This document shows positions 7,743-61,822 of a stretch of 64,000 nucleotides of DNA, piece after piece. The stretch's first letter is position 1. Every line of letters starts with the position of its first letter. Under the pieces are notes generated by a model. It worked only from the letters and a program-made list of their open reading frames with translations, did not search any database and had not been told where the DNA came from. A program made the translations under genes and the position numbers. The stretch is taken from positions 62,001 to 126,000 of IMG/VR virus record IMGVR_UViG_3300036770_007495. One strand, written 5' to 3'.

Positions 7743-7806
7743 TATAGAAGCAGTACATTGGCTCGACACGCCAAAGAAGAAGGAGCGTTACCTTCACTCC
7801 CTACCA
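7733..7806 (+). tRNA. tRNA-Val(GAC)
   Basis: ttggc-tcGACac-gccaa; ACCA. Confidence 0.8.
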
Positions 7807-7807
7807 T

Positions 7808-7882
7808 GGTTCCTAAGCATAGATAGCGATGCACACGATTGGTATTTGTGATAGAGGAGTGCAAATCTCCTAGGAACCTCCA
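7808..7882 (+). tRNA. tRNA-Thr(GGT)
   Basis: cacga-ttGGTat-ttgtg; TCCA. Confidence 0.8.
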
Positions 7883-7924
7883 CTCATCGCAGACAACACA
7901 TAAAATGCATGTATGTGAAGCAAC

Positions 7925-8011
7925 TAATAAAAAAACAATGTAGTTGCAAATAGCGAAGTTGAGATTAAAATAATGCACAAGAGCAAGATAAAGCTCAATG
8001 ATCTTTGAAAA
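7925..8011 (+). promoter_or_regulatory. rRNA-like promoter plus boxA-like antiterminator
   Basis: A-tract, TTGCAA-16 bp-TAAAAT, TGATCTTTGAAAA at 7999-8011. Confidence 0.55.
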
Positions 8012-8014
8012 ATT

Positions 8015-8420
8015 CCGTGGTGGCAGAACAATGGGTCGCCAGCCCATAATGCACTAAGCAACGTCTGAAAAGACGCCAGGTAGGTTGAAGAAGTTGTGCC
8101 GGATAAAGCTGAAATAGCCAAGGTTGGCTAACCTTGAGTGACGTAAGAAGACAACAAATCGCAATAATCTTGCTGATGGCTGTATTGTCTTGGAGATAAC
8201 CATTCCTCCCTATCATTAACAGTGAGAGTAATTAACTCATTGGATAGTGGCTGAATAATCCGACACAATGGAGGCTTGTGAGTAGTCAGGAATCTCACCC
8301 ACACTAATTTTGGCTAACGAATTCTGTATGCCACCTCCCGTAACCAATGGAAAAATTACAGAATGCGTTTGTGGGAGTCGCAGAAACCTTCAGTAATTTT
8401 CAACAATCTCGCAAGAGGAT
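8015..8420 (+). ncRNA. large ornate ncRNA candidate (GOLLD/ROOL-class)
   Basis: many complementary segments incl. ggtggca/tgccacc, ttgtgccggat/atccgacacaa, cccaca/tgtggg, attctgta/tacagaat; no credible ORF. Confidence 0.6.
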
Positions 8421-8441
8421 AAAAAGGAAACACACATACAC

Positions 8442-8657
8442 ATGAATAAAAACGCATATGAAATTCGCTTGGAAGTTCTTGGAATGGCTCATGGCACCGT
8501 CTGGAGCCTGTACCATGAAAAGCTCAATGCAATGAGAATCAATGCTGATAAAGCAAATCAGTTCTTTGATGAGACATTGGTTGACAAGCTTGCGCCTAGC
8601 GCAAAGGACGTTTTGTCTTATGCTGCTGAACTCTATGAGTTCGTAGAAGGCAAATAA
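8442..8657 (+). CDS. small hypothetical phage protein
   Basis: AAGGA upstream; MNKNAYEIRLEVL..A...LYEFV pattern typical of T4-like phages. Confidence 0.75.
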   Translation: MNKNAYEIRLEVLGMAHGTVWSLYHEKLNAMRINADKANQFFDETLVDKLAPSAKDVLSYAAELYEFVEGK

Positions 8658-8705
8658 AGTCAAAGTGGTGCTGGATAACCACATTAAACACCAGCTATTT
8701 TCAAT

Positions 8706-8801
8706 GCTCCAGTAGCTCAATTGGTAGAGCGGAAGGCTTATACCCTTCGTATGCACCAGATTAGTGCGCGGTTGTCGGTTCGAGCCCGGCCTGGAGTACC
8801 A
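8706..8801 (+). tRNA. tRNA-Ile(TAT) with long variable arm
   Basis: gaagg-ctTATac-ccttc; canonical D and T arms; ACCA. Confidence 0.85.
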
Positions 8802-8809
8802 TTTTACAT

Positions 8810-9265
8810 ATGAGATTTGAAGGAAAAAAAGTGATTGTTGCAAGTGGATATTTTGACCCACTGCACATTGGTCATGTTGAATATCTCAAACTAGCAAGAA
8901 TGCTGGGTGATATGCTGGTAGTCATTGTCAACAATGACAAGCAAGCTGCTCTCAAAAAAGGAAAATCATTCATGTCTGAAAATGACAGATGGCGCCTTGT
9001 GGGTGAACTCAAATGTGTGGATATTCCAGTTCTCTCCATTGACGATGGTGCATCTGTATCTGATACAATTCAAATGCTTGTAGACAAAGGTTTCAATCCT
9101 GCCATCTTTGCCAAAGGTGGTGATAGATTCAGCAATGAAATACCTGAAGCACAGGTGTGCAGAGAGCATGGTATTCAAATCGTGGATGGTCTTGGAGACA
9201 AGATTAGATCATCATCAGAATTAGTTTCCAACGCATATGAAAGTAGATTACAAATTTGTCCCTAA
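8810..9265 (+). CDS. cytidylyltransferase-family protein (TagD/RfaE-II-like)
   Basis: SGYFDPLHIGH; KGGDR; SSS. Confidence 0.85.
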   Translation: MRFEGKKVIVASGYFDPLHIGHVEYLKLARMLGDMLVVIVNNDKQAALKKGKSFMSENDRWRLVGELKCVDIPVLSIDDGASVSDTIQMLVDKGFNPAIFAKGGDRFSNEIPEAQVCREHGIQIVDGLGDKIRSSSELVSNAYESRLQICP

Positions 9266-9590
9266 AGGATGGGGGTTTGAAAAGTGGATTTGCAACAATG
9301 AAAAATATTGCGGCAAATTGCTCTTCATTGCCAAAGATAAGAAGATTTCTTGGCATTATCACAAACTCAAGGATGAACATTTTTACATCAACAAAGGTTC
9401 AGTAATAGTCCTTTATGGTGACAATAAAAATATCAATTTAGCTACATCTGAAATTCTGAAGCAAGGTGATGTATTTCATGTTCCAGTTGGAATGATTCAC
9501 AGATTAATTGCTTTAGAAGATACAGAGGTATTTGAATTTTCGACTCAACATTTTGACGAAGATTCTATCAGAGTGGAAAAAGGTGATTGA
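9237..9590 (+). CDS. cupin-domain protein (sugar isomerase-like)
   Basis: KGWG.E.W, SWHYHKLKDE, G..HR, EFST. Confidence 0.8.
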   Translation: MKVDYKFVPKGWGFEKWICNNEKYCGKLLFIAKDKKISWHYHKLKDEHFYINKGSVIVLYGDNKNINLATSEILKQGDVFHVPVGMIHRLIALEDTEVFEFSTQHFDEDSIRVEKGD

Positions 9591-9592
9591 AT

Positions 9593-9668
9593 GGCCAAGT
9601 GACGGAATGGCATACGTATCGGTCTCAAAAACCGAGTTCTGTGGGTTCGACTCCCACCTTGGCTACCA
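9593..9668 (+). tRNA. tRNA-Leu(CAA), short variable loop
   Basis: tcggt-ctCAAaa-accga; ACCA. Confidence 0.85.
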
Positions 9669-25049: not shown

Positions 25050-25511
25050 TTAGTCTTCTTGGTTTGCTTTGCATTCTTCACATCCATCACAATCGCATCC
25101 TTCTTCAGCATGTTTGCAATGCATGTGTTCTTCAGCTTCTTCTTTGCCTTTAGTTTTGCTAATGGCTGCACCAATTTTTTCGCGACGCTTTTTGAGATAT
25201 TCATCTGTTGAATCAGAATCGCCATCATTATCAATATCATCATCTTCTTCGCCAACTGCATCAAGCTTTTCAAGATATAATGACATCACATGTTGATATG
25301 CAAAATCGAAAACATTTTCTGGCTGAGCACTCTCAACCAAAGCATTTAATTCATTGGTAAGAGCAGACTCTTTCTTAATAAACTCTTTGATCTTTTTCTT
25401 AGACATCTTTTTAGCTATTTCTTTAGCAGCACCCTTTACTTTGGTGTTTCCCTTTTTAGCACCCATGGCTGCTTTGAAAAGGTTTTGTTGTTTTTTAGAT
25501 TTTGATGGCAT
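25050..25511 (-). CDS. charged late protein
   Basis: MPSKSKKQQ; DIDNDGDSDSTDEYLKKRR. Confidence 0.65.
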   Translation of the reverse strand: MPSKSKKQQNLFKAAMGAKKGNTKVKGAAKEIAKKMSKKKIKEFIKKESALTNELNALVESAQPENVFDFAYQHVMSLYLEKLDAVGEEDDDIDNDGDSDSTDEYLKKRREKIGAAISKTKGKEEAEEHMHCKHAEEGCDCDGCEECKANQED

Positions 25512-25522: not shown

Positions 25523-26440
25523 TTATGCAGCTGCGCGCATTTTTAAAAGCATTTTCTCAATTGCCAAGTCTTTCATTTTGAGCTCCACTTCATAATCTAC
25601 ACTTTTGCCAAAGTCAGTAGGAAGCAATTCTGCATAATCAGCATGCTTGCGAGTTCCATCAATGCCTTCACTGTAATGAAACACAGGACGACAAGGCCAG
25701 GTGCTGTGAGCCATGTCAAATGCTTCTTGATGAGACATTGCATCGCCAATCATTTCATGATGCAGATTGTCATAAGTCACAGGAATTTGCTCAGTCTTGT
25801 ACAGTTGATTGTACAACTCTTGAATGGTCCATTGACCTTGCTTGTTGTCATTCACCTCAACAACAAGGCGTTTGCGAACTGAATCGGAGCATTTGGCAAG
25901 ATTGCGACGAAACGTTTGCCCCAGTTTCTCCACGTCGCCCTGTTGTCGAATGTGAATGTTAAGAGGAGATGCATAGCTTTGGGGCAACCCAAGAAGATCA
26001 AAGATCTCCCCATGTTGCTCCAAGTCTCGAATGGAATTAGCAATGACACGCTCATCTTCACTTGTCAGAGAGATGAATTCAGAAGGATGAGCGCTGGTGC
26101 GCATGTTGTTGTCAATGATGGCTTGTTTGGCTTCATCCATGGCATCAAAGATTTTTTGTGCATCATCAAAGTCAGTGATTTGCATGTTGACATTGGGATG
26201 ATTGATGACAGGCACAAGATCAGAAGACAGACGATATCGCTCAATGCCCATGTTTTTGCACATGCGTACAATTTTAGCAACAGTCTTGAAGTTGTTGATG
26301 ATGCGAGAAGCAAGAATGCTTTCCGCTTGTTTGCGCGGCAGTTTGGCAAACTGCGTGTATGTCATGGTCTGAAATTTGATGCCTTGCTCTTTGCATTTGA
26401 GAGAGATGCAGCACAGACCGAGTGAATAGTTGTAAGTCAT
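25523..26440 (-). CDS. uvsE: UV damage endonuclease
   Basis: YRLSSDLVP, SAHP, NIH, E.ND, YDNLHH, FHYSE, HADY, E.K.KD.A. Confidence 0.9.
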   Translation of the reverse strand: MTYNYSLGLCCISLKCKEQGIKFQTMTYTQFAKLPRKQAESILASRIINNFKTVAKIVRMCKNMGIERYRLSSDLVPVINHPNVNMQITDFDDAQKIFDAMDEAKQAIIDNNMRTSAHPSEFISLTSEDERVIANSIRDLEQHGEIFDLLGLPQSYASPLNIHIRQQGDVEKLGQTFRRNLAKCSDSVRKRLVVEVNDNKQGQWTIQELYNQLYKTEQIPVTYDNLHHEMIGDAMSHQEAFDMAHSTWPCRPVFHYSEGIDGTRKHADYAELLPTDFGKSVDYEVELKMKDLAIEKMLLKMRAAA

Positions 26441-26475
26441 GTTGTACAATACAATGAAAATGCAGGACAATCAAC

Positions 26476-26512
26476 AAAAAAGACCCGAGCAGCATAAAAT
26501 ACTGCTCGGGTC
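26476..26512 (-). terminator. intrinsic terminator after queF
   Basis: gacccgagcag/ctgctcgggtc followed by T-run on minus strand. Confidence 0.75.
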
Positions 26513-26551
26513 ATCCCGGTTTCTGTTTTTGTTGCTAAGCTACACAACAAA

Positions 26552-27481
26552 TCATTGCTTAGGTGTCTTGATGTGGCAATATTCTGTATTGCTCAAAGAG
26601 CCATGCAGCAACATTTCACTTGACACACGTTCTGGATTGATGTCAATGCCACCGCGACGAGCATACAAGCAAACAACAGACAGTTCACTTGGCTTCAAAG
26701 CATCATGCAGACGTTTGTAAATGGTTTCACAAATTTCTTCATGAAAGTGACATTCATCACGGAATGAAATGATGTAGCGCAGCAATGATTCAGGCGTCAC
26801 AGTCTTGTTGCCTCTGATGTGAATCAAAACATCACCCCAGTCAGGCTGAGAAGTCACACGGCAATTGCTCTTGAGCAATGCACTATGATACCTGTATGGT
26901 TTGCCTTTGCTACCACGCACAGTTTCAGCATCAACAACTTCAAGCAGTTCAGGAGTTTCTTGATAAACAGTCACTTCACCTGCATCATAATTGTCTTCAA
27001 GAGTTTCATACTCTTCAAGACCATATTCATCTGAAACAGATGTCTGCTCACAAATTGCTTCATAATTGCTAAAGACCCTGACTTCAACTTCAGTTTCAAG
27101 CAATTCGCTAAGATCTTTTGCAGCTGTTTCAGCAATGACATTGTGAACTTCATGTGCATTGTTTCCCAACTTAGTCATGTTGAATGAGTTGAAATACAAT
27201 TTGATGGACTTGGATTCCACAATGTACTTGCTGGAGCAAGGATAAACAATCTTTGCAACGCCAGTCACAGGAACACCTTTGTTGGTCAGTGCAGAGATTT
27301 CATATGCATTCCAAGTATCATTGCCATAAAATGGTAAATCATCATCTTGAATGTTGAGATGCTTGCGATTGTTGCTACGAGGCTCTCTCACAAGAAGAGA
27401 TGCATCGTATTGAGACTTGTACTCCGAGGTCTTACCAAGGTGCACACTGATGTTGCTGTTGTCGAGTTTATCTAATGCCAT
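26552..27481 (-). CDS. queF: NADPH-dependent preQ0 reductase (bimodular)
   Basis: ESKSIKLYFNSF; C.VTSQPDWG; FHE; YARRGGID. Confidence 0.93.
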   Translation of the reverse strand: MALDKLDNSNISVHLGKTSEYKSQYDASLLVREPRSNNRKHLNIQDDDLPFYGNDTWNAYEISALTNKGVPVTGVAKIVYPCSSKYIVESKSIKLYFNSFNMTKLGNNAHEVHNVIAETAAKDLSELLETEVEVRVFSNYEAICEQTSVSDEYGLEEYETLEDNYDAGEVTVYQETPELLEVVDAETVRGSKGKPYRYHSALLKSNCRVTSQPDWGDVLIHIRGNKTVTPESLLRYIISFRDECHFHEEICETIYKRLHDALKPSELSVVCLYARRGGIDINPERVSSEMLLHGSLSNTEYCHIKTPKQ

Positions 27482-28013
27482 ATTTGTTGAGTGTTTGTTT
27501 GATTGTTTGCATGCGCTGTTCCACTGTCCCTGACAATTCTACCAGTTGTTCTGGTTTGCACCAATTGTGAATTTTATATTCCATTGCTGCAACAATTTGC
27601 TTTCTAAAATCTACATCTGTAGATCTTTCACCATCATCTACCAAATCAAAATCTGCAGAACAATAGAATACAAGATCTATTTTTTGCAACAGAACACTAA
27701 ACAAGTTCCATGCATAATTGTATACCCATGCACTCACTTTGTTTTTCTTGTAAAGCCATTCTGTATAAACCAAACCATCAATGATGCACCGATCCATGAT
27801 GACATCACCTGCAATGAATGAATTGGTGAGATGTTGATTAAGAATCAGCAACTGCGTAACATCACCTGCATGCTCATTGATGGGAACATTGTAAGTGCGC
27901 TTCACATAACGAGTCACTTCATCAACATAAGTCACAGGCAAATTGAGTTTTTTACACTCATTGAGCAGAGTACTTTTGCCAGTGGATTGAGCTCCAGTAA
28001 AACTAATGACCAT
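27468..28013 (-). CDS. AAA_28/NadR-like nucleotide kinase
   Basis: GAQSTGKSTL; MDRCIID. Confidence 0.8.
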   Translation of the reverse strand: MVISFTGAQSTGKSTLLNECKKLNLPVTYVDEVTRYVKRTYNVPINEHAGDVTQLLILNQHLTNSFIAGDVIMDRCIIDGLVYTEWLYKKNKVSAWVYNYAWNLFSVLLQKIDLVFYCSADFDLVDDGERSTDVDFRKQIVAAMEYKIHNWCKPEQLVELSGTVEQRMQTIKQTLNKYGIR

Positions 28014-28016
28014 GTA

Positions 28017-28565
28017 TTATAGTAATGTCTTGAGAAGTTTAATCCACTGTTCAATGGAAGTTTTTTTGAGAGTTGCAATGGTTTCTTCTACACTCTTGCA
28101 ATGTGCAATGGCTACCTCATCATGCATCACAATGGGACCACCATCCACTTCTGCAGTAACGCGATGAATGACACAACCACTAAAAGGCAATTTCAGTTCA
28201 AAAGCTTTCTTTTGAGGATCTTTGCCTTTGAGCTGAGGAAACTTTTTGATGTCTCCAGGATGCCCATTGAAGATTTGATATCGTTGACACACATCTCCAG
28301 GCACAATTTTGAGCCACCCATGCAGAGTTACAAGAGGCTCATCACCTGCTGAAAAAGCATCAAACAAAGAGTTGTAGAGCTTGCTCTCTACTTTGCTCTT
28401 TGCATCAACTTGAACTAGCATGCTTTTGTTCCAAATGGAAGCATCAACTTCAGCAGCATTTGTAACAACAACGTCAGGCCATTTGTTGAGTCGTTTGCAG
28501 ACTTCTTGCAACTCACTGCCTGTTTGTGAGAACATTGCAAACCAGCATCGCTTTACATCACTCAT
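28017..28565 (-). CDS. PurN-like formyltransferase (DpdN candidate)
   Basis: FSQTGS; LHGWLKI; NGHPG; G..IH.VT.EVD.GPI. Confidence 0.8.
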   Translation of the reverse strand: MSDVKRCWFAMFSQTGSELQEVCKRLNKWPDVVVTNAAEVDASIWNKSMLVQVDAKSKVESKLYNSLFDAFSAGDEPLVTLHGWLKIVPGDVCQRYQIFNGHPGDIKKFPQLKGKDPQKKAFELKLPFSGCVIHRVTAEVDGGPIVMHDEVAIAHCKSVEETIATLKKTSIEQWIKLLKTLL

Positions 28566-28566
28566 A

Positions 28567-29364
28567 TTATTTGACAATGTTTTTGAAATGCATGATGTTG
28601 TATTCAATGCGCTTCATTTCTTCATCTGAAACTTTGTGATCAATCATCTCCACAAGCTTTTGAGAAGGCTTGATTTCAAGACCGTGCTCACCATTGTACA
28701 AATATCCTTTGATGCCTGCAACAACAGGATTGCTTGTATCAATGGAGTGAATGTTGTGAATGCAGTGATCTCTGTAAAAGCCAAATTCTTTGGCAATGGA
28801 GCAACCAAGCAAATGGTGCGGCTTTTTGTAATTCCAAATGCCATCAGCAATGAGATTCTTGATGAATCGAATTCGACCATCACACTGACGCTGCAGCTTA
28901 TTGGATCCAATGCCTGTGCCTTGATAGTAACTCAAATCAAAACTAATGGCAATCATGTCAGCACTTTCAGACATGAACTGATAACAATTTGCCAATTCAG
29001 CATACGTTCTGCCCTGCACCGTGCCAATTTTTACACCAGGCAGACCAGTATAAGTGCTTCCAAAGTTGATGAAGTTTTGAATGGTTTCTTCACCATTCTC
29101 GAGAACATCTGGCAACACATAATATGACGGCTGAAGCTTTTCAATCCAATCTGCAAATTTGTCAGCATCAAATGCTGTACCCAATTCAAAGATGCTGTTG
29201 TCAAGTAGCACATCTCTGTGAAGCTTGTGACGAGCATTGTAGAAAAAATTGTAATATTCTGGATGAGTCTCAAACAGATGAACCAATGCATAATCATAGT
29301 CTGTCTGTGGCTGAACTTTGCTCAGAATAGAGATTGGAGCTTCGTGTGCAATTTTAGGAGTCAT
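28567..29364 (-). CDS. TGT-fold (DpdA-like) protein
   Basis: LLDNS.FE, PDV, VQG, HLLG, SIDTS; next to queF. Confidence 0.65.
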   Translation of the reverse strand: MTPKIAHEAPISILSKVQPQTDYDYALVHLFETHPEYYNFFYNARHKLHRDVLLDNSIFELGTAFDADKFADWIEKLQPSYYVLPDVLENGEETIQNFINFGSTYTGLPGVKIGTVQGRTYAELANCYQFMSESADMIAISFDLSYYQGTGIGSNKLQRQCDGRIRFIKNLIADGIWNYKKPHHLLGCSIAKEFGFYRDHCIHNIHSIDTSNPVVAGIKGYLYNGEHGLEIKPSQKLVEMIDHKVSDEEMKRIEYNIMHFKNIVK

Positions 29365-29413
29365 TGCCAACAATATACATGGTGTTCTCAAATTTTCAAC
29401 TTAAATATCTAAT

Positions 29414-29980
29414 ATGTTACCCAAAGTAGGAAGTTTTCTCAACAATGCGACCAGCACTTTTGATCAAATCACAAAAATTGCCAAAGGCATCATGTGTATC
29501 CCGTCTTTGCTTGGAACTTTGTTTTCAGGTGGCGGTCTCAAGTCTTTTGGTGCAGCAGTTTTAGCATCAGCAGGTAACATTGTATCAACCATTGTTCAGA
29601 ATGAAATTGCTCTCATTGGCAATCTTGTTAGTCAAGCATTGAGACAATTGTATAGAGATGTAATGTCCATCATCAGGACATTCAAAGCCGTCTTTGATAC
29701 TGTTGCTAAATTGCGTCAAAAGACTCAAGATACTCTTGATTATGTTAAGAATACAGAAAACTGTGCATATGCAGCAGGTGACTTGGTCTCATGTGTTTTG
29801 ATTTCAGCAACCAACTTGCAAAAAACCATCAGAAAGCCTGCACAAAAATTAGATGAATTCAACAACAAATTGTATGATGCAGTTGGTGGATCCACTGGAA
29901 CACTCAACAACTATGTCAATAAAAATTTGCAATTTCTCGACAAAGCAAAGATGCAAATGAATCTGCAAAATCTACTATGA
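29414..29980 (+). CDS. late hypothetical protein (baseplate region)
   Basis: TAAATA upstream; overlaps gp5-like start. Confidence 0.7.
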   Translation: MLPKVGSFLNNATSTFDQITKIAKGIMCIPSLLGTLFSGGGLKSFGAAVLASAGNIVSTIVQNEIALIGNLVSQALRQLYRDVMSIIRTFKAVFDTVAKLRQKTQDTLDYVKNTENCAYAAGDLVSCVLISATNLQKTIRKPAQKLDEFNNKLYDAVGGSTGTLNNYVNKNLQFLDKAKMQMNLQNLL

Positions 29981-32394
29981 ACGAACAACTTCTTCCAGGT
30001 GATGAGCCAACCAACATCAAGCAAATGGTGCTGGAAAACAACATTTATGGCATGCAATTTTCGGGATTTTATCGCGGCATTGCGATTCAAAACAATGATC
30101 CTGAGAGACGTGGCCGTGTCAAAGTTTACATTCCTGCATTTGCACCTCAAATTTACAATCAATGGTATGATCAAGATGATACCAACAAAAGCTTTCGATT
30201 TCCAGCAGGTAGCAACATTTACAAAAATGAAGCATCTCTCAAATTAATTTTTGAAGAAGCTAAGAAAATTTTGCCATGGGCTGAACAAGCATCATCATTG
30301 CTCGGAGCAGGCTCACCAGGTACATACGTCAAATCAAGTGATGTAGCAACCATCAGCGACAGCAGCTCTGCAAAGTTGCCTGCACCAGGCGGTGCTTTGA
30401 ACGTTGATGGCATTGGTGAGAAGGCAGGCTTCTTGTATGAGACTCCTGTAGGACAACTCAAAGATGGTTTCAATGGATACAATGCTGATGGAATGCCTGA
30501 AACCAATCCATACGCATTTCAATTCAAACCATCTACTTACAGCAATTGCACCAAAGGTGTTTTTACAGTGCCTGATGTAGGTGCAAACGTCTGGGTGTTT
30601 TTTGAGAATGGCAACATTGAAAGCCCCATTTATTTTGCCTACAGTTTTGACAAAAGCGATTGGCAAAAAGTCAATGAGATGGTCAATGCTGATGAAACCA
30701 ATGCAGGCATCAACTATCCAGGTGCATTTGAAAATTCTAAGAGTGGGGACCCACAAGCTTACAAAAAAGGCAAAACTGTTTGGAACTCCAAAGGCGGAAC
30801 CATTGAAGTCATTGACACGGACGACAATGAATCAGTAAAAATTACCCATGCAAGTGGTTCCTTTTTGCAGCTTCACAAATTAGCTACTACAAATCTTGTC
30901 ACTGGCAATGATCAAAAATTGGTGCTCAAAACACAATTTGAAACCATCACCAACAACAAAAATGTTCACGTCAAGAAAACATACAACATTGGTGTTGATG
31001 AATCAAGATGGACACGCATTGGTGATTGGAGAAATAGGGATGCTTACCAGCAATGGGTTGAGTTGAATCGCCCCATTGCAGACACAAGATCACGTTTTGC
31101 AATCAAGCGCTCTGCAGGAGCACCACACACATCTTCTTTGACTGTGCCTGCAGGTAGCGTGAATCAACAGCGAAGTGGATCATTTGCTTCAAATCCTGTG
31201 CTGAGTCAACAGCCTGTTGCAGTTGCATCTGCTTCCATTCCAAACAACATTTATGAGTCAACTCCTGTAGCAAGTGAGCAAGATGGCAATCAGGCAGGTA
31301 CGCTTGAGACAGCTGTGCGTCAGGTTGCTACAGATTCTTCTGATGCTGTTGCAACATCTATTCCAGTCAATGAGTTTGCTATTGCGGCAGGCAAGCGCGG
31401 CTCAAACAACTTTGTTGGTTCAGATCCTAAACTGTCTGCATCAACTCAAGACGGCAAATGGGATGTTGATGAGAGCTATGCTGACATCAGCAATTTTGAA
31501 ACAGCACAAAGTCAAAGAATGCTTGAATATGAGCAGAAGTTTGGCACAGGTGGTGATGAGACCATTGAAATTCTTCGACACAAATATGAAGTTGTAGGCG
31601 GAGCTTTCAATGATACTCAAAGCGTTAGAGTTGATTCAGTTGGACGAACTGAATTCAATGAGATGCTCATTTGTACAAAAACAGCATTTGCTTCACAAAA
31701 GCCAAGTCCATTGGTTGAGCGTGTTGCCAATGATGGTAAATTTCCATGTGGTAATTATTCATTGACCATTTGCAACAGCTTCAACTGCACAGTTGGTAGC
31801 GGTGGTATTCATATGACAACTCTTGGCACAGTTGATTTGGCTGGATCACAAGTTGTAATTTCTGGCTCAAATGAACTCATCATGAGCTCACCCGGTGATG
31901 TAAAAATTGTTTCTGGTAGTCGTTTCAATGTTACTGCTGACATTGTTACATTGCGTCAATCAGAAGGTAAACAAGTTGGCATTGATTGCAGCTTGGGTGT
32001 GCGCAACAATGTAATCATTGGTGGTGGTGCATATGTTGAAGGTGAGTTGTTTGTGAACCATGTTACAGCACCAGTTGAAATTCAAGAAACAGAGCTCACA
32101 AAACTGTATGGTAGACCAGACAATGAGAATAAAAAAGTCATTGGCTATGTCAAGGTAAATAATCAATGGCAGCCAGTCTATTCATGTGTGCCAGAAGAGG
32201 GTAGATTCAATGATGCAGACAGCATCATCAATGTTCCACATTCTCACAACTTTAGAAACTTGCCACTCAAGCTTGTTGACAACAATGCAAGTGTGCGAAC
32301 AGCTGCTATGCCAATGAACAAAGGAACAGCGCCAGTTGTTGCTGGCGCTGTCTCAAATGGCAAAAAGACTATTTCTAAAGTTGAATTGAGTTAA
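29977..32394 (+). CDS. gp5/VgrG-like baseplate hub/spike
   Basis: YRG....NDPERRGRVKV; LPWA; G.F.VP.VG..VWVFFENG..P; HASGS. Confidence 0.8.
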   Translation: MNEQLLPGDEPTNIKQMVLENNIYGMQFSGFYRGIAIQNNDPERRGRVKVYIPAFAPQIYNQWYDQDDTNKSFRFPAGSNIYKNEASLKLIFEEAKKILPWAEQASSLLGAGSPGTYVKSSDVATISDSSSAKLPAPGGALNVDGIGEKAGFLYETPVGQLKDGFNGYNADGMPETNPYAFQFKPSTYSNCTKGVFTVPDVGANVWVFFENGNIESPIYFAYSFDKSDWQKVNEMVNADETNAGINYPGAFENSKSGDPQAYKKGKTVWNSKGGTIEVIDTDDNESVKITHASGSFLQLHKLATTNLVTGNDQKLVLKTQFETITNNKNVHVKKTYNIGVDESRWTRIGDWRNRDAYQQWVELNRPIADTRSRFAIKRSAGAPHTSSLTVPAGSVNQQRSGSFASNPVLSQQPVAVASASIPNNIYESTPVASEQDGNQAGTLETAVRQVATDSSDAVATSIPVNEFAIAAGKRGSNNFVGSDPKLSASTQDGKWDVDESYADISNFETAQSQRMLEYEQKFGTGGDETIEILRHKYEVVGGAFNDTQSVRVDSVGRTEFNEMLICTKTAFASQKPSPLVERVANDGKFPCGNYSLTICNSFNCTVGSGGIHMTTLGTVDLAGSQVVISGSNELIMSSPGDVKIVSGSRFNVTADIVTLRQSEGKQVGIDCSLGVRNNVIIGGGAYVEGELFVNHVTAPVEIQETELTKLYGRPDNENKKVIGYVKVNNQWQPVYSCVPEEGRFNDADSIINVPHSHNFRNLPLKLVDNNASVRTAAMPMNKGTAPVVAGAVSNGKKTISKVELS

Positions 32395-38530: not shown

Positions 38531-38998
38531 TTATGCTTCCCATGGATATACAACCCATACGGTGCTTTCTATGGCATATATATCTGGGACATAATATGAG
38601 TCGTGCGCACGATGCAGAGTAGCAAATCTAATTTTGTTGGCTTTGTTGCTTTTTTCTAGATATTTTGTGATGCATGAAATGGTTCTGCCAGAATCGCAGA
38701 TGTCATCAACAATAAGCACGTTTCTGTTGTCAACAAACTCATCAAGTTCCTTGCCAATGTCATTGTAAAATTCTACACCATCCAATTGTTTGGTGTCATC
38801 ATAGGACTTTAATCCAATGATTCTCATGGGCAAATTTAAATTGTGTGCAAGCCACACCGCAGGAATCGCGCCACCTCGCAGCAATCCAATGATGCAATCA
38901 AACTTCAAATCAAGTTCTCGTTCATGCTGTTTGATTTTTTCTTGTAGAACGTTGCAAAGCACATCAAATTCTTGCCATGTAAGATAATGTTTATCCAT
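38531..38998 (-). CDS. Gpt-like phosphoribosyltransferase
   Basis: GLLRGG; VLIVDDICDSGRT; WVVYPWE. Confidence 0.9.
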   Translation of the reverse strand: MDKHYLTWQEFDVLCNVLQEKIKQHERELDLKFDCIIGLLRGGAIPAVWLAHNLNLPMRIIGLKSYDDTKQLDGVEFYNDIGKELDEFVDNRNVLIVDDICDSGRTISCITKYLEKSNKANKIRFATLHRAHDSYYVPDIYAIESTVWVVYPWEA

Positions 38999-55533: not shown

Positions 55534-56382
55534 ATGGCAACTAACTCAATTGGAATTAACATTAAACAGCTTCCACAGCTCAATGCTGTTCAGTCGGGTG
55601 ATTTCATCATCATTGAGACTCCTGATGGAACTGGTGTAGTGGATTTTAATGACATCATCATTGACTTGAATCAAACAAGCTTTGAAAGCACCATAGATTC
55701 TTTGGTGTCTACCACTGTTGCATTGAGCACACAGTATTCTTCCTTGAGCAGCACAATCTATGATGATGTTGCAGTTGCTCTTGGTGCTCCAATTGCCATC
55801 TTCAAAAATGTCACACCCCTCACTGGTGGTCAAACCTTTTCAGGACCAGACATTGATTTGCCATTCAATTTCATTGAAGTGAATCAGCTATCACAGCAGC
55901 AATCTGCTGATGATTTTACTGCTGTAAATGTTTGTACAGACTTAACTCTGTCAAAGCCTTCAAGTGCATTCATTTTTCCTGCAGGCACATACAAAACATT
56001 CATCAATGCAAGCATTACATCTGCTACCTCAAGCACAGGCTGGATGCAGCTGTATTTGTATCAAAAGACACCACCAGAACAGGTGCTGTTGCTTGGTTCA
56101 GCCTTTACACCAACTGAATTGAATCAGCAAAAAACACTCACTGTTGATGGTGCTTTTGTTTTGTGCAAAGAAGCAGAAATTTCTTTGAGAGCCACAACAT
56201 ATGGCAAGTTCAAAATTGGCAATGCAGTATCCAACACACTTTATGCAGCTGCATCTGCACCATCATTGAGTGCAAGTCTTTTCAAGATGCTGCAGACAAG
56301 TGCATGCAACATAAGCATGTACATTGAACAAATACCTGCTGCAGCAGCACCTGCTGTTAATGCATTGTCTAAGGCGTTATAA
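55534..56382 (+). CDS. late structural protein (fibre/baseplate-like)
   Basis: TAAATA upstream; INIKQLP N-terminus; beta-rich. Confidence 0.55.
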   Translation: MATNSIGINIKQLPQLNAVQSGDFIIIETPDGTGVVDFNDIIIDLNQTSFESTIDSLVSTTVALSTQYSSLSSTIYDDVAVALGAPIAIFKNVTPLTGGQTFSGPDIDLPFNFIEVNQLSQQQSADDFTAVNVCTDLTLSKPSSAFIFPAGTYKTFINASITSATSSTGWMQLYLYQKTPPEQVLLLGSAFTPTELNQQKTLTVDGAFVLCKEAEISLRATTYGKFKIGNAVSNTLYAAASAPSLSASLFKMLQTSACNISMYIEQIPAAAAPAVNALSKAL

Positions 56383-57103
56383 GGCCTGTGTCTTTGAACA
56401 ATTGACTCTTTTGCTGATTGAGCAGCTCTTTGACTGCTTCTTGAACATCTTCAGATCCTGCCACTTGCTGCAGATCTTCCATCCAGGAATCATCTGGAGA
56501 GATGGTGTTGCCACGCTCATTAATGTAGTTGGCAATGTCTTTGATTCTCATGAACCTATCTGATGAGAAGATGGGAATGATTGCAGGGCGATCTTCCTTG
56601 TCAAACAACACAAACTTGTCATTGTACAGATATTGATTGTAAATGACTTCAAAGATGTTGTTGATTTCTTTGATGTAGTCAACATCAGTCTCTCTCATGC
56701 CATCGCGTGAGATGGCAATGTTTTCATTGTAAGGCACCCAGAAGATGATGTCAAGATCTTTTATGGATTCGCGCACTTTGCTGATGCACTTTGAAATGAA
56801 TGCATCGTCAATGTCAGATACACCCTTTTCGTTGGCCCACATTGAGTATACAATGTTATCCAGCGGGCACCTATCATACACAACATTGTCTTCAGGGGTT
56901 TTACCCTTCATTTGCTCAACCATGAAGTCAAGAATAGCTTTTTGGCCTCTCTTGGTCACGTGCTTGCTGTGTTGAATATCATTTTCAACAATGAGATTTC
57001 TATACGATTTCTCTGGTGTTGAGTACATGGTCCACACAGTCAGAAAGTCTCTGACGAGCGTTGTTTTGCCTGTGTTTGCTGTGCCGCTGAATGCAATTCT
57101 CAT
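56369..57103 (-). CDS. AAA_28/NadR-like nucleotide kinase (second)
   Basis: GTANTGKTT; YDRCPLD. Confidence 0.8.
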   Translation of the reverse strand: MRIAFSGTANTGKTTLVRDFLTVWTMYSTPEKSYRNLIVENDIQHSKHVTKRGQKAILDFMVEQMKGKTPEDNVVYDRCPLDNIVYSMWANEKGVSDIDDAFISKCISKVRESIKDLDIIFWVPYNENIAISRDGMRETDVDYIKEINNIFEVIYNQYLYNDKFVLFDKEDRPAIIPIFSSDRFMRIKDIANYINERGNTISPDDSWMEDLQQVAGSEDVQEAVKELLNQQKSQLFKDTGLITP

Positions 57104-57331: not shown

Positions 57332-57793
57332 TCATTTATCCTCTTCATTATCTTTTTCAACGTCCGTTTGTGGTTTTTTCTTGGGCTTTGCTGCTGGCTC
57401 TTCGTTCTTTTTCAACACATTCTTGTTGATAGACTCAATGAGATCACGTTGCGTCTCACGAGTGAGCTGCATTTTTTTCATGGCTGTCTGCGGTGAAACC
57501 CATTTGTAGTCAATGTGCTCATCACTAATTTTTACCACAGTTGCATTGCATTTGCAGTGAAACAGCTCAAAGTTGTGCATCTTGTAAATGCTCTTGATGC
57601 CAACAACTTTGAGCCCAGTCTCTTCATGCACCTCACGCTTCACTCCTTGAGCAAAAGTTTCATTTGCCTTGATGTGACCACCCGGCAAATGCCACTTTTT
57701 TTTGTCTTTTGGCAGCAAAAGGAGAACTTTGCCATTATGTTGAATGATGGCTTTGCTCACCCGCTTGGTATCTTTTTCTGATGAATCTTTCAT
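57332..57793 (-). CDS. Nudix hydrolase
   Basis: LPGG.....E.......REVHEETGL. Confidence 0.9.
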   Translation of the reverse strand: MKDSSEKDTKRVSKAIIQHNGKVLLLLPKDKKKWHLPGGHIKANETFAQGVKREVHEETGLKVVGIKSIYKMHNFELFHCKCNATVVKISDEHIDYKWVSPQTAMKKMQLTRETQRDLIESINKNVLKKNEEPAAKPKKKPQTDVEKDNEEDK

Positions 57794-58662
57794 ACAGAAC
57801 AGGTTTTATCCCATGCACTCACATGCAGGCGTGACAGACCAGTGAAACCATACTTTTTGGCCATTTCAAGCACAAATGCAGTGCGTTCATGGAAGTTTTC
57901 TCGACTATCCATGCCAGGCATGCACACCACCTGAGTCATGTCAATGCCAAATGGCTCCAGATAATCTGCAATGAATTCCTTGATGTCTTCTTCAGTTGAA
58001 ATCACAAACTTAAACCATGAATTCCAGTGGTCTCTGATGCGACAAATTGCATCTGGCACAATGCGTTCTTCCTTGCTCAAACCGGTGTTACTGAGCTTTG
58101 CACTGCAGTTGATCTGATGCAGACGGCTATACAATTCATCTTGAATAAACTGCGTTCCATTGGTCTCGATCTCATTGTATACACCAAAATCAACTTTAGG
58201 ATCTTCATTGATGTATTTGTCAGTGAGATAGTCAATGAAGTTTGTAATGCATTTCTGATGACGCGGCAGAGTTGGCTCACCACCAGTCCAAATGAGATGA
58301 GTCTGCCCTTTGAACACCCAATCTAGCATGGTAGAACCATCATAATTCTTATACTCTTTCCAACGATTGATGAGATATTCAAATGGTTTCTTCTCACCAA
58401 AAAGCCAAACTGGAAGAGAGTCGCAAGTCCAAGTTGCTTGACCTGCAGCATGCAAATCACCCTTGAAAGACCCCGGATCTGTGTTGCCTTGACCAGCATC
58501 TTTCACCTGTTTAGCAAGTGCTCTAGTAGCACCGCAAGTGAGATTGCAGTCTTTGAGACGGATAAAATAAGAAGGATGACCAGTAGTAATGCCTTCACCC
58601 TGCACTGAGAAAAAGTCCTCAGAAATTACAAGATAATCATGGTTATTGATAGTTTCACTCAT
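57790..58662 (-). CDS. queE: 7-carboxy-7-deazaguanine synthase (radical SAM)
   Basis: F.SVQGEG...G.P..FIRL..CNL.C; TGGEP; ETNG; RLH. Confidence 0.88.
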   Translation of the reverse strand: MSETINNHDYLVISEDFFSVQGEGITTGHPSYFIRLKDCNLTCGATRALAKQVKDAGQGNTDPGSFKGDLHAAGQATWTCDSLPVWLFGEKKPFEYLINRWKEYKNYDGSTMLDWVFKGQTHLIWTGGEPTLPRHQKCITNFIDYLTDKYINEDPKVDFGVYNEIETNGTQFIQDELYSRLHQINCSAKLSNTGLSKEERIVPDAICRIRDHWNSWFKFVISTEEDIKEFIADYLEPFGIDMTQVVCMPGMDSRENFHERTAFVLEMAKKYGFTGLSRLHVSAWDKTCSV

Positions 58663-58709: not shown

Positions 58710-59465
58710 ATGAGCAAAAAAACTCGCTTGCGCAAAGCGCTGGCAGACCTCGAATTCGGTGATGGTGACATTGAAGTTCATACCACAAGATCATCTTCAA
58801 ATCTCGGAATCAGAAACAAGTATCAGCTCAATGATGTACATAAATCCTTCTTGGATACTTGTTTATATGAAAAAACCAAAATGGTGCTTGTTGATGGACC
58901 AGCTGGTACGGCAAAAACCTTTTTAGCAGTGTATGCTGGCTTGTTGCTGCTGCAAGAGAAAAAAATTAAAAATATCATTTACATTCGCAGCATTGTAGAA
59001 TCAGCAACCAAAAGCATTGGTGCATTGCCAGGTGAATTGGATGAAAAATTCAAGCCTTGGAGCTTGCCTTTGCTGGATAAACTCAATGAATTGCTGCCGC
59101 CAACTTCCATTGATGATCTCATGGAAAGTGGCACCATCAAGTGCATTCCTGTGAACTTTGTTCGTGGTCTCACCTTTCATGATTCCATGGTTATCATTGA
59201 CGAATTCCAGAATCTTACACATGAAGAAGGTGTTACAATCCTGACTCGCTTTGGTCACAACAGCAAGTACATTGCCATTGGCGATGCTCGTCAGGCAGAC
59301 ATTGGCTCAAAGTCCGGGTTCAAGGATTTGTTCAACGCTTTTGATGATGAAGAAAGCGCAGAACATGGCATTCATACTTTTAGGTTCGGCGAGAACGAAA
59401 TTGTACGAAGCAAAATTCTGCGCTTTATCGTGAGCAAAATTGCTAAGGTAAAGAAGTCGGGTTAA
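58710..59465 (+). CDS. phoH: PhoH-like ATPase
   Basis: GPAGTAKT; G.LPG..EK; RG.TF; IIDEFQN; GD..Q.D; IVRS. Confidence 0.92.
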   Translation: MSKKTRLRKALADLEFGDGDIEVHTTRSSSNLGIRNKYQLNDVHKSFLDTCLYEKTKMVLVDGPAGTAKTFLAVYAGLLLLQEKKIKNIIYIRSIVESATKSIGALPGELDEKFKPWSLPLLDKLNELLPPTSIDDLMESGTIKCIPVNFVRGLTFHDSMVIIDEFQNLTHEEGVTILTRFGHNSKYIAIGDARQADIGSKSGFKDLFNAFDDEESAEHGIHTFRFGENEIVRSKILRFIVSKIAKVKKSG

Positions 59466-60088
59466 TTGCCCCAACTTGTACCTTTGAACCAATCTCCCTT
59501 GCCAGATGACACATTGGGTCCAACACTTGCTGGACGACCGCCATTGCGTGTAACTTCTGGTGCAACAAGCGGAGTAACTTCTACTGGTTCAGGTGCAGGC
59601 TGTTCACCACCCAATCCATCTTCAGGAATTTCACGATCTTGCTCTACATCACAGTCACAGAAGAGAGCAGAGTTGTCTTCATGCTCAAACACTTCTACTT
59701 GCTTCACCCAGCAGCGATCACCATACTTGGCTTTGAGAAATTCTGATGCCATTTCAAAGCATTTTTCAGCAGCTCGCTCAATGCCAACACCCTTGTCAAA
59801 AATGCGCAGTTGAATGATGCCAGATGCATCCAATGCTTTGAGCTGCTCAAGAGCGGGATCATCAGCAGCTGCACAATACGTATGATCAAACACATGCTGC
59901 AGTTGCTGCTTCAGCTCTTTAAGACCACCAAAATCAACAGCCCAATTCTTTTCATCAAGCTCTTTGCAACCAAACCAAAACTTTGCTTTGAGTTGGTAAC
60001 CGTGAATGTATTGACAGTGAGAATGCGTTGCTCTCCATTGACGAAATGCGCAGGAGCCTAATTCAATGACTTTGGTACTTGTAAACAT
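59462..60088 (-). CDS. queD: 6-carboxytetrahydropterin synthase
   Basis: HC..IHGY; VDFG.LK; FDH; V.E. Confidence 0.85.
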   Translation of the reverse strand: MFTSTKVIELGSCAFRQWRATHSHCQYIHGYQLKAKFWFGCKELDEKNWAVDFGGLKELKQQLQHVFDHTYCAAADDPALEQLKALDASGIIQLRIFDKGVGIERAAEKCFEMASEFLKAKYGDRCWVKQVEVFEHEDNSALFCDCDVEQDREIPEDGLGGEQPAPEPVEVTPLVAPEVTRNGGRPASVGPNVSSGKGDWFKGTSWGN

Positions 60089-61174: not shown

Positions 61175-61822
61175 ATGGAATTACTCAAATACGCTAATGG
61201 TAATCTGCCGCAAACTGAACAAGAGCGTCAGAAGATGATTGAAGAAGCAGCTGAGCATTATGCTGCATTTATGAAAGCATTGAAGTTTGACTTCAAGAGC
61301 GATCCAAATAGTGCTGATACACCACGACGTGTTGCTAAAGCATTTGTCAATGATGTTATCAAAGGCTGTTATGAAGATGCACCAAGCATCACTGCATTTG
61401 ACAATGTTGACCAATACAACGGCATGGTGTGTCAGAACAACATTCGACTCACTTCACTTTGCAGTCACCACCACATGCCATTCACTGGCTTTGCGCATGT
61501 TGCATACATTCCAAGTCGCAGCGGCAAAGTCATTGGACTGAGCAAGCTCAATCGCATTGTTGATTGGTTTGCTCGTCGTCCGCAGGTGCAAGAAAATCTC
61601 ACCATGCAAATCCATCACTTTGTGAATGAAGTTTGTGGCAACAACAATGGTGTTGCAGTCATGATTGAAGCCAAGCACAACTGTTGCAGCAATCGTGGCA
61701 TCAAGCATGATTCAACCATGCGCACAGCATACATGAGCGGTGCATTCCTTGAAAATGGAGACAGCTCTCGTGCAGAGTTTTACAACTTTGTTGATCATGC
61801 ACAGAATCGAAACCTCATGTGA
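61175..61822 (+). CDS. folE: GTP cyclohydrolase I
   Basis: TPRRVAK; SLCSHH.MPF.G; GLSKL.R; RRPQVQE; H.C...RG. Confidence 0.95.

What the first reader, a model, noticed from the sequence alone, without database searches (positions are those of the whole stretch)
26552..29364. 7-deazaguanine DNA modification operon predicting formylated preQ1
Seen: TGT/DpdA-like, PurN-like formyltransferase, P-loop kinase and queF in one operon, with queE, queD and folE at 57.8-61.8 kb; queC is not in the window. Established: phage FolE/QueD/QueE/QueC/QueF plus DpdA put preQ1 into DNA, and a PurN-like DpdN yields 7-(formylamino)methyl-7-deazaguanine. Inference: fdPreQ1-modified genome. The alternative is modification of the phage's GUN-anticodon tRNAs.
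Basis: partly seen in the sequence, partly recalled or inferred. Interest (0 to 1): 0.65.

Follow-up and report, generated by a model that had tools for sequence, protein, structure and literature searches.

The report
Phage operon for formyl-preQ1 DNA
An uncultured 225-kb phage carries the gene set that, in one studied Flavobacterium phage, goes with replacement of every guanine in the DNA by a formylated 7-deazaguanine. It is a new member of a known system, but it highlights two conserved partner genes, a nucleoside/nucleotide-type kinase and a purine phosphoribosyltransferase, that the main text of the defining paper does not discuss.

Summary
Window 26552-29364 (- strand) holds four tightly packed genes. 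They are a DpdA3-type transglycosylase (265 aa), a DpdN-type PurN-like formyltransferase (182 aa), an AAA_28 P-loop kinase (181 aa) and a bimodular QueF (309 aa). A promoter-like site and a strong terminator hairpin bracket them. QueE, QueD and FolE lie at 57.8-61.8 kb. QueC lies 11.8 kb beyond the window end in the same 224.7-kb genome.

[quoted passage not shown] That phage's DNA has all G replaced by fdPreQ1 (PMC10516641). The DpdA-like protein has no Pfam hit, but its model matches tRNA-guanine transglycosylases. The formyltransferase keeps the PurN Asn-His-Asp triad.

The tRNA alternative is weak. This is a new member of a known kind.

Beyond the finding, the kinase follows DpdA3, directly or after the formyltransferase, in about 76 of 78 environmental loci with enough flank, and also in Campylobacter phage CP220. 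A purine phosphoribosyltransferase co-occurs in 11-12 of 15 DpdA3 phage records. The main text of that paper mentions neither. Whether they serve guanine salvage or a nucleotide-level route is open.

The parts
28567..29364 (-). DpdA3-type (TGT-fold) guanine transglycosylase, 265 aa
   Evidence: Identity is 51% to immuto DpdA gp206, 45% to CP220 gp056 and 23% (E 3e-8) to phiST CGPG_00065. It matches phrog_19058 at 4.5e-59. The AF2 model (pLDDT 93.9) has tRNA-guanine transglycosylases as its top Foldseek hits, E 3e-9, TMq 0.68. D55, D86, D143 and D209 are invariant.
28017..28565 (-). DpdN-type PurN-like formyltransferase, 182 aa
   Evidence: PF00551 scores 43 bits. Identity to the type DpdN, YP_010114479.1, is 44%. 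It aligns to GAR transformylase structures with N100, H102 and D141 conserved. immuto is the only phage-isolate hit among 50,697 records.
27468..28013 (-). AAA_28 P-loop kinase (deoxynucleoside-kinase / thymidylate-kinase fold), conserved partner of DpdA3
   Evidence: PF13521 scores 2.1e-13. Top Foldseek hits are deoxyadenosine kinase and thymidylate kinases. The family profile matches TMPK, dNK and NadR-RNK structures. Identity is 32% to immuto gp203 and 34% to CP220 gp057. It lies next to DpdA3 in about 76 of 78 loci.
26552..27481 (-). QueF, bimodular NADPH-dependent preQ0 reductase (makes preQ1)
   Evidence: Pfam QueF_N and QueF both match. TIGR03138 gives 4.7e-78. Identity to immuto QueF is 46%. 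The ESKSIKLY motif and the Cys and Asp of the SNCRVTSQPD segment are visible in the alignment.
29372..29399 (-). sigma-70-like promoter candidate just upstream of the DpdA3 start
   Evidence: TTGAAA-16-TATATT, 10 of 12 matches. This is a consensus match only.
26482..26512 (-). intrinsic-terminator-like hairpin just after the QueF stop
   Evidence: 14-bp stem, 8 GC pairs and a T-rich tail.
38531..38998 (-). 6-oxopurine-type phosphoribosyltransferase, co-occurring with DpdA3 systems
   Evidence: PF00156 scores 3.8e-19. PDB 1vdm purine PRTase scores 4e-20, and Xpt/Hpt families also match. Identity to immuto gp211 is 32%. Homologues occur in only 14 of 50,697 phage records, 9 of them immuto or phiST-type. 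They occur in 11-12 of 15 DpdA3-bearing IMG/VR records.
57790..58662 (-). QueE-like radical-SAM CDG synthase (ORF runs to 58800; the likely start is the Met at 58662)
   Evidence: phrog_2076 scores 8.9e-36. TIGR QueE models match weakly at the cluster-binding N-terminus. The translation shows that the upstream part of the ORF overlaps PhoH on the other strand.
59462..60088 (-). QueD-like 6-carboxytetrahydropterin synthase
   Evidence: PF01242 scores 7.3e-14 and phrog_2389 scores 2.5e-34.
61175..61822 (+). FolE, GTP cyclohydrolase I
   Evidence: PF01227 scores 9.5e-49 and NF006824 scores 2.2e-52.
57332..57793 (-). NUDIX hydrolase abutting QueE (possible nucleotide-pool or pterin pyrophosphatase; role uncertain)
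   Evidence: PF00293 scores 5.2e-14. The best NCBIfam hit, far below its cut-off, is dihydroneopterin triphosphate diphosphatase.
56369..57103 (-). second AAA_28 paralogue, 244 aa (role uncertain)
   Evidence: PF13521 scores 1.1e-10. It was also found in the own-genome scan.

Best explanation
This is a phage 7-deazaguanine DNA-hypermodification system of the DpdA3/DpdN type.

Pathway as inferred from the families:
- FolE, QueD, QueE and QueC convert GTP to preQ0.
- QueF reduces preQ0 to preQ1.
- The DpdA3-type TGT-fold enzyme puts the deazapurine in place of guanine in phage DNA.
- The PurN-like DpdN formylates the 7-aminomethyl group with 10-formyl-tetrahydrofolate, giving 7-(formylamino)methyl-7-deazaguanine (fdPreQ1).

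By analogy with the three characterised DpdA3 phages, replacement is probably complete and protects the genome from restriction.

Shown here: gene identities, collinearity, folds, catalytic-residue conservation and pathway completeness. Inferred: the chemistry, the extent of replacement, and the order of formylation and insertion.

The conserved AAA_28 kinase and the purine phosphoribosyltransferase most likely belong to the same system. My preferred reading of them, which is inference only, is a guanine/GTP supply loop: guanine released from DNA goes to GMP, then to GDP/GTP, and back into FolE.
For: - The four-gene cassette is collinear with, and 51/44/32/46% identical to, that of immuto_2-6A. 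LC-MS of that phage's DNA found 345,000 fdPreQ1 per 10^6 nucleotides and no dG (PMC10516641).
- The DpdA3 homologue has a TGT fold and invariant acidic residues.
- DpdN keeps the PurN N-H-D triad and family-specific motifs shared with the type DpdN.
- The operon is bracketed by a promoter-like site and a terminator.
- The genome has no canonical tRNA TGT.
- The same cassette recurs in many phage contigs, with or without the formyltransferase.
Against: - No chemical data exist for this phage.
- DpdA3 and DpdN have never been reconstituted. The authors' attempts to test DpdA3 in E. coli failed.
- QueF scores below the strict TIGR03138 cut-off (262.5 against 293.45), although both Pfam domains pass.
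- Some 4-base G-containing palindromes are depleted (CATG, GATC, GTAC, GGCC; O/E 0.65-0.73). A fully protected genome would not need that depletion.
- The published model does not account for the kinase or the PRTase.
Confidence: 0.8

Rival explanations
1. The end product is the same (deazaguanine DNA), but the route is pre-replicative or nucleotide-level. The purine PRTase, or DpdA3 acting on a nucleoside or nucleotide, makes a preQ1 nucleotide. DpdN formylates it at the nucleotide level. The AAA_28 kinase phosphorylates it. Ribonucleotide reductase and the phage family-B polymerase then deliver it into DNA, while a pyrophosphatase lowers dGTP.
For: - The kinase has a deoxynucleoside/dNMP-kinase fold, with invariant substrate-pocket-type residues beyond Walker A.
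- It lies next to DpdA3 in about 76 of 78 loci and in CP220.
- Kinase fusions exist with dUTPase, formyltransferase and GNAT.
- The purine PRTase co-occurs and sits inside the operon in L005, L103 and immuto.
- MazG, PRA-PH, HD or NUDIX genes lie nearby in phiST, immuto, CP220 and the window.
- DpdN keeps the loop that aligns with PurN's GAR-phosphate loop.
- All characterised DpdA3 phages show 100% replacement, and ADG nucleoside was seen in infected cells (as cited in PMC10516641).
- RNR and polB are encoded.
Against: - Every characterised TGT-superfamily enzyme acts on a polynucleotide.
- The published view is that the modification is post-replicative.
- The window genome has no MazG, PRA-PH or clear HD dGTPase.
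- Campylobacter phages lack the PRTase at E 1e-5, and phiST lacks an AAA_28 orthologue.
- The kinase and PRTase are equally explained by guanine salvage.
Confidence: 0.15
2. The genes serve RNA rather than DNA. The phage boosts preQ1 supply, or itself modifies tRNA (its own tRNA-Asn(GUU) or host tRNAs) for translation.
For: The phage carries 24 tRNAs, including two tRNA-Asn(GUU). The DpdA3 fold is that of tRNA-guanine transglycosylase.
Against: - The genome has no PF01702 TGT.
- The 265-aa protein covers only about half of TGT (TMt about 0.5). It has no CxCxxC zinc motif among its conserved columns.
- Its orthologues are in phages with chemically proven DNA modification.
- No Asp, His or Tyr tRNAs are encoded.
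- Formyl-preQ1 is not reported in RNA in the papers read.
Confidence: 0.03
3. The DNA carries plain dPreQ1, and the formyltransferase is an auxiliary purine-biosynthesis PurN or acts on an unrelated amine.
For: The best Pfam, TIGR and PHROG names are PurN / GAR transformylase. 55-58 related loci make do without it.
Against: - It scores far below the PurN equivalog cut-off (50 against 150 bits).
- It sits inside the operon between DpdA3 and the kinase, as in immuto.
- It shares the motifs LKGKDPQ and FSQTGSE with the type DpdN, not with PurN.
- One relative is fused to the kinase.
Confidence: 0.05

Closest known systems
[quoted passage not shown] 2023, PMC10516641)
   Same: The DpdA3 - DpdN - AAA_28 kinase - QueF order is the same, with 51/44/32/46% identity. 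The same full preQ1 pathway and the same purine PRTase (32%) are present.
   Different: - The genes are scattered over three places in a 224.7-kb genome (88.5-91.4, 119.8-123.8 and 137.8 kb), not one 9-kb cluster.
- The cassette is divergent from a gp5-like baseplate hub gene rather than upstream of a family-A polymerase.
- This phage has a family-B polymerase.
- It has no PRA-PH/MazG-like hydrolase.
dADG system of Campylobacter phage CP220 and relatives (DpdA3, 100% replacement)
   Same: It has a DpdA3 orthologue (45%) followed immediately by an AAA_28 kinase orthologue (34%).
   Different: CP220 has no QueF and no DpdN next to its DpdA3, and DpdN-like genes were found only in immuto among phage isolates. 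By the paper, its pathway stops at CDG/ADG. It has an HD + P-loop fusion upstream and no PRTase homologue at E 1e-5.
dDG system of Cellulophaga phage phiST (DpdA3 + DpdL)
   Same: It has a distant DpdA3 homologue (23%, E 3e-8) with the LDN, PxD and S-x-D motifs kept. It has the same purine PRTase family. A P-loop kinase-like gene lies next to its DpdA3 (AAA_18/AAA_33).
   Different: The end product differs, and phiST has no QueC, QueF or DpdN. Its neighbouring kinase is not an AAA_28 orthologue. It has a MazG-like neighbour.
Bacterial Dpd system (bDpdA + DpdB ATPase + DpdC) and phage DpdA1/DpdA2
   Same: A TGT-superfamily enzyme exchanges guanine in DNA for a 7-deazaguanine. bDpdA acts in complex with DpdB, so a second protein partner has a precedent. 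That DpdB is an NTPase is from my own knowledge and was not checked here.
   Different: By the paper, bDpdA and DpdA2 modify under 0.1% of G and DpdA1 0.1-30%. From my own knowledge, not tested here, they match Pfam TGT and DpdB is ParB-like. DpdA3 here has no PF01702 match and is paired with a small-molecule-kinase fold.
PurN (GAR transformylase)
   Same: It has the Formyl_trans_N fold, the Asn-His-Asp catalytic triad, an N-terminal loop that aligns with the GAR-phosphate loop, and presumably a 10-formyl-THF donor.
   Different: It scores far below the PurN equivalog score. It has the family-specific LKGKDPQ insertion. Its genomic context is deazaguanine genes, not purine genes.

Membership tests
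DpdA3 (phage DNA 7-deazaguanine transglycosylase subfamily) | Sequence homology to DpdA3 of phages with chemically shown deazaguanine DNA (immuto, CP220, phiST) | tested here: met
   51% identity (E 4e-88), 45% (E 3e-63) and 23% (E 3e-8) respectively. Among 50,697 phage records, only Campylobacter and immuto phages are hit.
DpdA3 (phage DNA 7-deazaguanine transglycosylase subfamily) | TGT-like TIM-barrel fold | tested here: met
   The AF2 model has pLDDT 93.9. All top-50 Foldseek PDB matches are tRNA-guanine transglycosylases, with E down to 2.9e-9, probability 1.0 and TMq 0.63-0.69.
DpdA3 (phage DNA 7-deazaguanine transglycosylase subfamily) | Catalytic aspartates of the TGT superfamily (general base and nucleophile) | tested here: inconclusive
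   D55 (LDNS), D86 (PDV), D143 and D209 (DTSNP) are invariant in 43 sequences. They occur in the same order as the TGT motifs. However, hhalign to E. coli Tgt aligned only the QG...HLLG stretch, at probability 1%, so no residue-level structural mapping was available.
DpdA3 (phage DNA 7-deazaguanine transglycosylase subfamily) | Co-encoded 7-deazaguanine base synthesis genes | tested here: met
   FolE, QueD, QueE and QueF are in the window and QueC is in the genome.
DpdA3 (phage DNA 7-deazaguanine transglycosylase subfamily) | Exchange of guanine in DNA for the deazapurine, with complete replacement | not testable with these tools
   This needs LC-MS of virion DNA or an enzyme assay. It has not been reconstituted for any DpdA3.
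DpdN (preQ1/dPreQ1 formyltransferase) | PF00551 formyltransferase domain with the catalytic Asn-His-Asp | tested here: met
   43 bits against a cut-off of 26.1. N100, H102 and D141 align to the PurN triad and are invariant in 33 family members.
DpdN (preQ1/dPreQ1 formyltransferase) | Groups with the type member YP_010114479.1 rather than with other phage formyltransferases | tested here: met
   44% identity over 182 aa. immuto is the only phage-isolate hit at E 1e-5. The invariant motifs FSQTGSE and LKGKDPQ are shared. No formal tree with the paper's groups 2 and 3 was made.
DpdN (preQ1/dPreQ1 formyltransferase) | Co-encoded with a DpdA and the whole FolE-to-QueF pathway | tested here: met
   It lies in the same operon as DpdA3 and QueF, and the rest of the pathway is in the genome.
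DpdN (preQ1/dPreQ1 formyltransferase) | Formylation of the 7-aminomethyl group | not testable with these tools
   This is predicted only, in the literature as well.
QueF type II (bimodular preQ0 reductase) | QueF_N + QueF domains, QueF motif and catalytic Cys | tested here: met
   Both Pfam domains are above their cut-offs. The ESKSIKLY motif and the Cys/Asp of SNCRVTSQPD are present. TIGR03138 scores 262.5, below its strict cut-off of 293.45.
Canonical tRNA-guanine transglycosylase (Pfam TGT, PF01702) | Match to PF01702 anywhere in the phage genome | tested here: not met
   There is no match at E 0.1 in the 224.7-kb genome, while the controls ring in 14 of 14 genomes.
Deoxynucleoside / (d)NMP kinase superfamily (for the AAA_28 gene) | P-loop kinase fold with Walker A, a DR motif and lid arginines | tested here: met
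   Top Foldseek hits are 2jat dAK, 8puu and TMPKs, at E 5e-8 and TMq 0.72. Profile hits are TMPK 1.6e-6, dNK and NadR-RNK. G7, G12, K13, R35, Q54, R75, D79, D127, R130 and R167 are invariant. The substrate is unknown.

The most novel reading that the evidence does not exclude
DpdA3 systems, the only deazaguanine systems known to replace 100% of G, are not a lone DNA transglycosylase. They work as a module with a dedicated deoxynucleoside/NMP-type kinase and a 6-oxopurine phosphoribosyltransferase.

Either the modified base enters DNA through the nucleotide pool, which would be pre-replicative like T4 hmC or Z-genomes, or the phage runs a closed guanine to GTP to preQ1 recycling loop that makes complete replacement affordable.

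A side lead is that relatives in which the kinase is fused to a GNAT next to QueF may make an N-acetyl-preQ1 base that has not been described.
Probability: 0.3. Interest if true: 0.7.

Novelty: new member of a known kind. Interest (0 to 1): 0.35.

Why it matters
As a prediction of fdPreQ1 DNA, the finding adds an uncultured 225-kb phage lineage to a modification so far shown chemically in one isolate group. The search also found 91 DpdN-like and more than 3,400 DpdA3-like protein clusters in metagenomes.

Such genomes should resist most G-dependent restriction enzymes. They may also behave oddly in nanopore or enzymatic library workflows.

The more useful point is mechanistic. A nucleoside/nucleotide-kinase-fold protein is almost always linked to DpdA3, and a purine PRTase recurs with it. 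This gives concrete, testable candidates for the factor missing when DpdA3 was tried alone in E. coli. It also bears on how complete guanine replacement is achieved.

Tried and rejected
- **Sequence searches of the DpdA-like protein.** Single-sequence and profile searches against PDB chains found nothing. Pfam gave only sub-threshold DUF6610 hits, for 18 of 43 members. DUF6610 is the DpdA4 family according to the paper.
- **hhalign to E. coli Tgt.** It gave a sensible but statistically worthless partial alignment, probability 1%.
- **Complex prediction, DpdA3 + AAA_28.** No verdict, score 0.00. It counts neither for nor against binding.
- **Megablast against phage isolates.** Megablast of window 26000-29999, which covers the cassette, found no match.
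- **Palindrome statistics.** They are inconclusive. Four 4-mers are depleted and the 6-mers are not.
- **Co-variation of DpdA3 residues with formyltransferase presence.** I dropped this test. On the tree, the formyltransferase-bearing loci are basal and the loci without it form one clade, so there are only one or two label changes and no independent contrasts.
- **Streptomyces phage AAA_28 homologues.** They were checked as a possible extension of the DpdA3-kinase pair. Their upstream gene is an FkbM methyltransferase, not a DpdA.
- **The 336-aa ORFs at 60119-61129 and beside QueC.** They are unrelated to each other.
- **Paper searches.** Searches for a published role of the kinase or PRTase, or for a pre-replicative deazaguanine route, found nothing relevant. 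The words kinase, ATPase, P-loop and phosphoribosyl are absent from the main text of PMC10516641. Its supplement was not read.
Full report
**Setting.** The window is bases 62001-126000 of a 224,703-bp viral record with 127-bp direct terminal repeats and 41% G+C. The phage is a large T4-like myovirus type. It has a gp5-like baseplate hub, a family-B polymerase, a UvsX-like recombinase, ribonucleotide reductase and 24 tRNAs.

**The observation.**
- On the - strand, four genes run head to tail with spacings of 1-3 bases or a 14-base overlap.
- A 265-aa protein lies at 29364-28567. It has an ATG start, and the longer TTG ORF is not needed.
- A 182-aa formyltransferase lies at 28565-28017.
- A 181-aa AAA_28 P-loop protein lies at 28013-27468.
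- A 309-aa bimodular QueF lies at 27481-26552.
- A promoter-like site lies 8 bases upstream of the first start codon. A 14-bp-stem terminator hairpin follows the QueF stop. The four genes therefore look like one transcription unit.
- QueC is absent from the window. It sits 11.8 kb beyond the window end, after polB and the UvsX-like gene.

**Identity of the first gene.**
- It has no Pfam or NCBIfam hit, and no sequence or profile hit in the PDB.
- tblastn against 50,697 phage records hits only the annotated DpdA of the Flavobacterium immuto phages (51%) and a protein of Campylobacter firehammer-type phages (45%).
- These are the DpdA3 proteins of Hutinet et al. 2023 (PMC10516641).
- A pairwise comparison also links it to the founding member, phiST CGPG_00065, at 23% identity and E 3e-8.
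- An AlphaFold model built on 43 homologues has pLDDT 93.9. Its top matches in the PDB are all tRNA-guanine transglycosylases.
- The protein is about 120 residues shorter than TGT. It has no conserved CxCxxC zinc motif. D55, D86, D143 and D209 are invariant.
- I could not map these aspartates rigorously onto the TGT catalytic residues.

**The formyltransferase.**
- It is 44% identical to YP_010114479.1, the protein named DpdN.
- It aligns with GAR transformylase structures. The Asn-x-His and Asp of the PurN triad are in place.
- Across 33 family members these residues are invariant. So are an N-terminal FSQTGSE loop and an LKGKDPQ motif.
- It scores far below the PurN equivalog cut-off, so it is not an ordinary purN.

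**Comparison with the known system.**
- In immuto_2-6A the order DpdA3, small ORF, DpdN, 'thymidylate kinase', QueF is the same.
- That phage's DNA contains fdPreQ1 in place of all dG and resists G-dependent restriction enzymes.
- It remains a prediction. No DpdA3 or DpdN has been reconstituted.

**The tRNA alternative.** It is weak. The genome has no PF01702 TGT. Only tRNA-Asn(GUU) of the four queuosine-family tRNAs is encoded.

**Distribution.**
- The DpdA3-like protein has 3,469 related clusters in the large protein collection. The DpdN-like protein has 91.
- I examined 80 IMG/VR loci by tblastn.
- About 55-58 loci have DpdA3 - AAA_28 - QueF with no formyltransferase.
- Four close relatives (L016-L019) have the window's arrangement.
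- About 17 more have a divergent formyltransferase in the same slot, sometimes with an extra small ORF.
- On a DpdA3 tree, the formyltransferase-bearing loci are basal and the loci without it form one clade.

**Two unexplained partners: the kinase.**
- The AAA_28 gene follows DpdA3, directly or after the formyltransferase, in about 76 of 78 loci with enough flank.
- It does so in the ENA/Logan contigs as well and in CP220, at 34% identity.
- phiST has a different P-loop kinase-like gene in the same place.
- The AAA_28 model (pLDDT 95.4) matches deoxyadenosine kinase and thymidylate kinases.
- The family profile matches TMPK, dNK and the NadR ribosylnicotinamide kinase.
- Invariant residues go well beyond the Walker A motif. 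This points to a small-molecule kinase rather than a motor ATPase.
- Natural fusions join the kinase to a formyltransferase, to dUTPase and to GNAT acetyltransferases.

**Two unexplained partners: the PRTase.**
- A 6-oxopurine-type phosphoribosyltransferase lies at window 38531-38998.
- It has homologues in only 14 of 50,697 phage isolates. Nine of those are immuto or phiST-type phages.
- It has homologues in 11-12 of 15 DpdA3-bearing IMG/VR records, most of them fragments.
- It lies inside the deazaguanine operon in immuto, L005 and L103.
- The main text of PMC10516641 mentions neither gene.

**Readings of the partners (all inference).**
- One reading is a salvage loop. Guanine expelled from DNA goes to GMP, then GDP/GTP, and feeds FolE. 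This would make complete replacement affordable and fits the published post-replicative model.
- A second reading is a nucleotide-level or pre-replicative route. The precedents are T4 hmC and Z-genomes. It fits the 100% replacement and the nearby NTP pyrophosphatases (MazG, PRA-PH, HD or NUDIX).
- A third reading is that the kinase is an NTP-using partner of the transglycosylase, as DpdB is for bDpdA.
- A complex prediction gave no verdict.
- I give (a) a slight preference and (b) about 0.15.

**Verdict.** The finding is real and correctly interpreted. It is a new member of a known kind. Interest is moderate to low as it stands (0.35). The kinase/PRTase link is a lead that could matter for how DpdA3 systems work.

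Noticed in passing
L103:4001-8665 (ENA ERZ1292626 contig, 40,347 bp); also proteins P0275, P0306, P0334: In a different phage type (DnaE-type polymerase), one operon reads AAA_28-GNAT fusion, QueF, a 309-aa unknown, QueD, purine PRTase, dUTPase/DCD-like, FolE. A GNAT takes the place of the formyltransferase. This suggests a possible N-acetyl-preQ1 derivative that is not described in the papers read.
   Followed up: partly
L105:1247-2368 (protein P0340): A single 373-aa protein fuses a Formyl_trans_N domain to the AAA_28 kinase. It lies directly after a 273-aa ORF of DpdA3 size. P0316 fuses the kinase to a dUTPase.
   Followed up: partly
window 309-9668: A cluster of 23 tRNA genes on the + strand, with one more elsewhere in the genome. 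Several have unusually long or odd forms, for example tRNA-Ile(tat) at 96 nt and tRNA-Trp at 84 nt.
   Followed up: no
window 25523-26470 (-): A UvdE-type UV damage endonuclease (PF03851, 4.9e-46) lies immediately downstream of the cassette's terminator. A DUF3008-like ORF lies at 25050-25511, a neighbour also seen in L007.
   Followed up: no
window 56369-57793 (-): A second, longer AAA_28 paralogue (244 aa), an 82-aa ORF and a NUDIX hydrolase lie directly downstream of QueE on the same strand. The best, sub-threshold NCBIfam match of the NUDIX is dihydroneopterin-triphosphate diphosphatase.
   Followed up: partly
window 58710-59465 (+) and 57790-58800 (-): A PhoH-like ATPase gene sits between QueE and QueD on the opposite strand. 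It overlaps the 5' part of the long QueE ORF, so QueE probably starts at the Met at 58662.
   Followed up: partly
window 60119-61129 (-): A 336-aa ORF between QueD and FolE has no family hit. It has an Ala/Gly-rich part and a Pro-rich tandem motif (repeats of NTQPANTP type).
   Followed up: no
window 61815-63687 (-): A Zn_protease-like ORF (PF05618, a family of putative ATP-dependent zinc proteases) is followed by 351-aa and 136-aa ORFs without any family hit.
   Followed up: no
whole genome (G000): The four-base palindromes CATG, GATC, GTAC and GGCC are depleted (O/E 0.65-0.73, z -5 to -16), while six-base palindromes are not. This is unexpected if all G is modified, and it is unexplained.
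   Followed up: partly
window 29414-32394 (+): A 188-aa basic ORF and an 805-aa gp5-like baseplate hub (Phage_base_V) are transcribed divergently from the cassette. This pairing of a structural gene with the DpdA3 cassette is conserved in most related loci.
   Followed up: partly
L089, L090, L074 (IMG/VR): Three DpdA3 loci form one small clade and lack the kinase, QueF and formyltransferase within the fetched flank. L089 and L090 have the full 8 kb downstream; L074 has only 1.25 kb, so its absence is weaker. They are the exceptions to the DpdA3-kinase rule and may use another arrangement.
   Followed up: no
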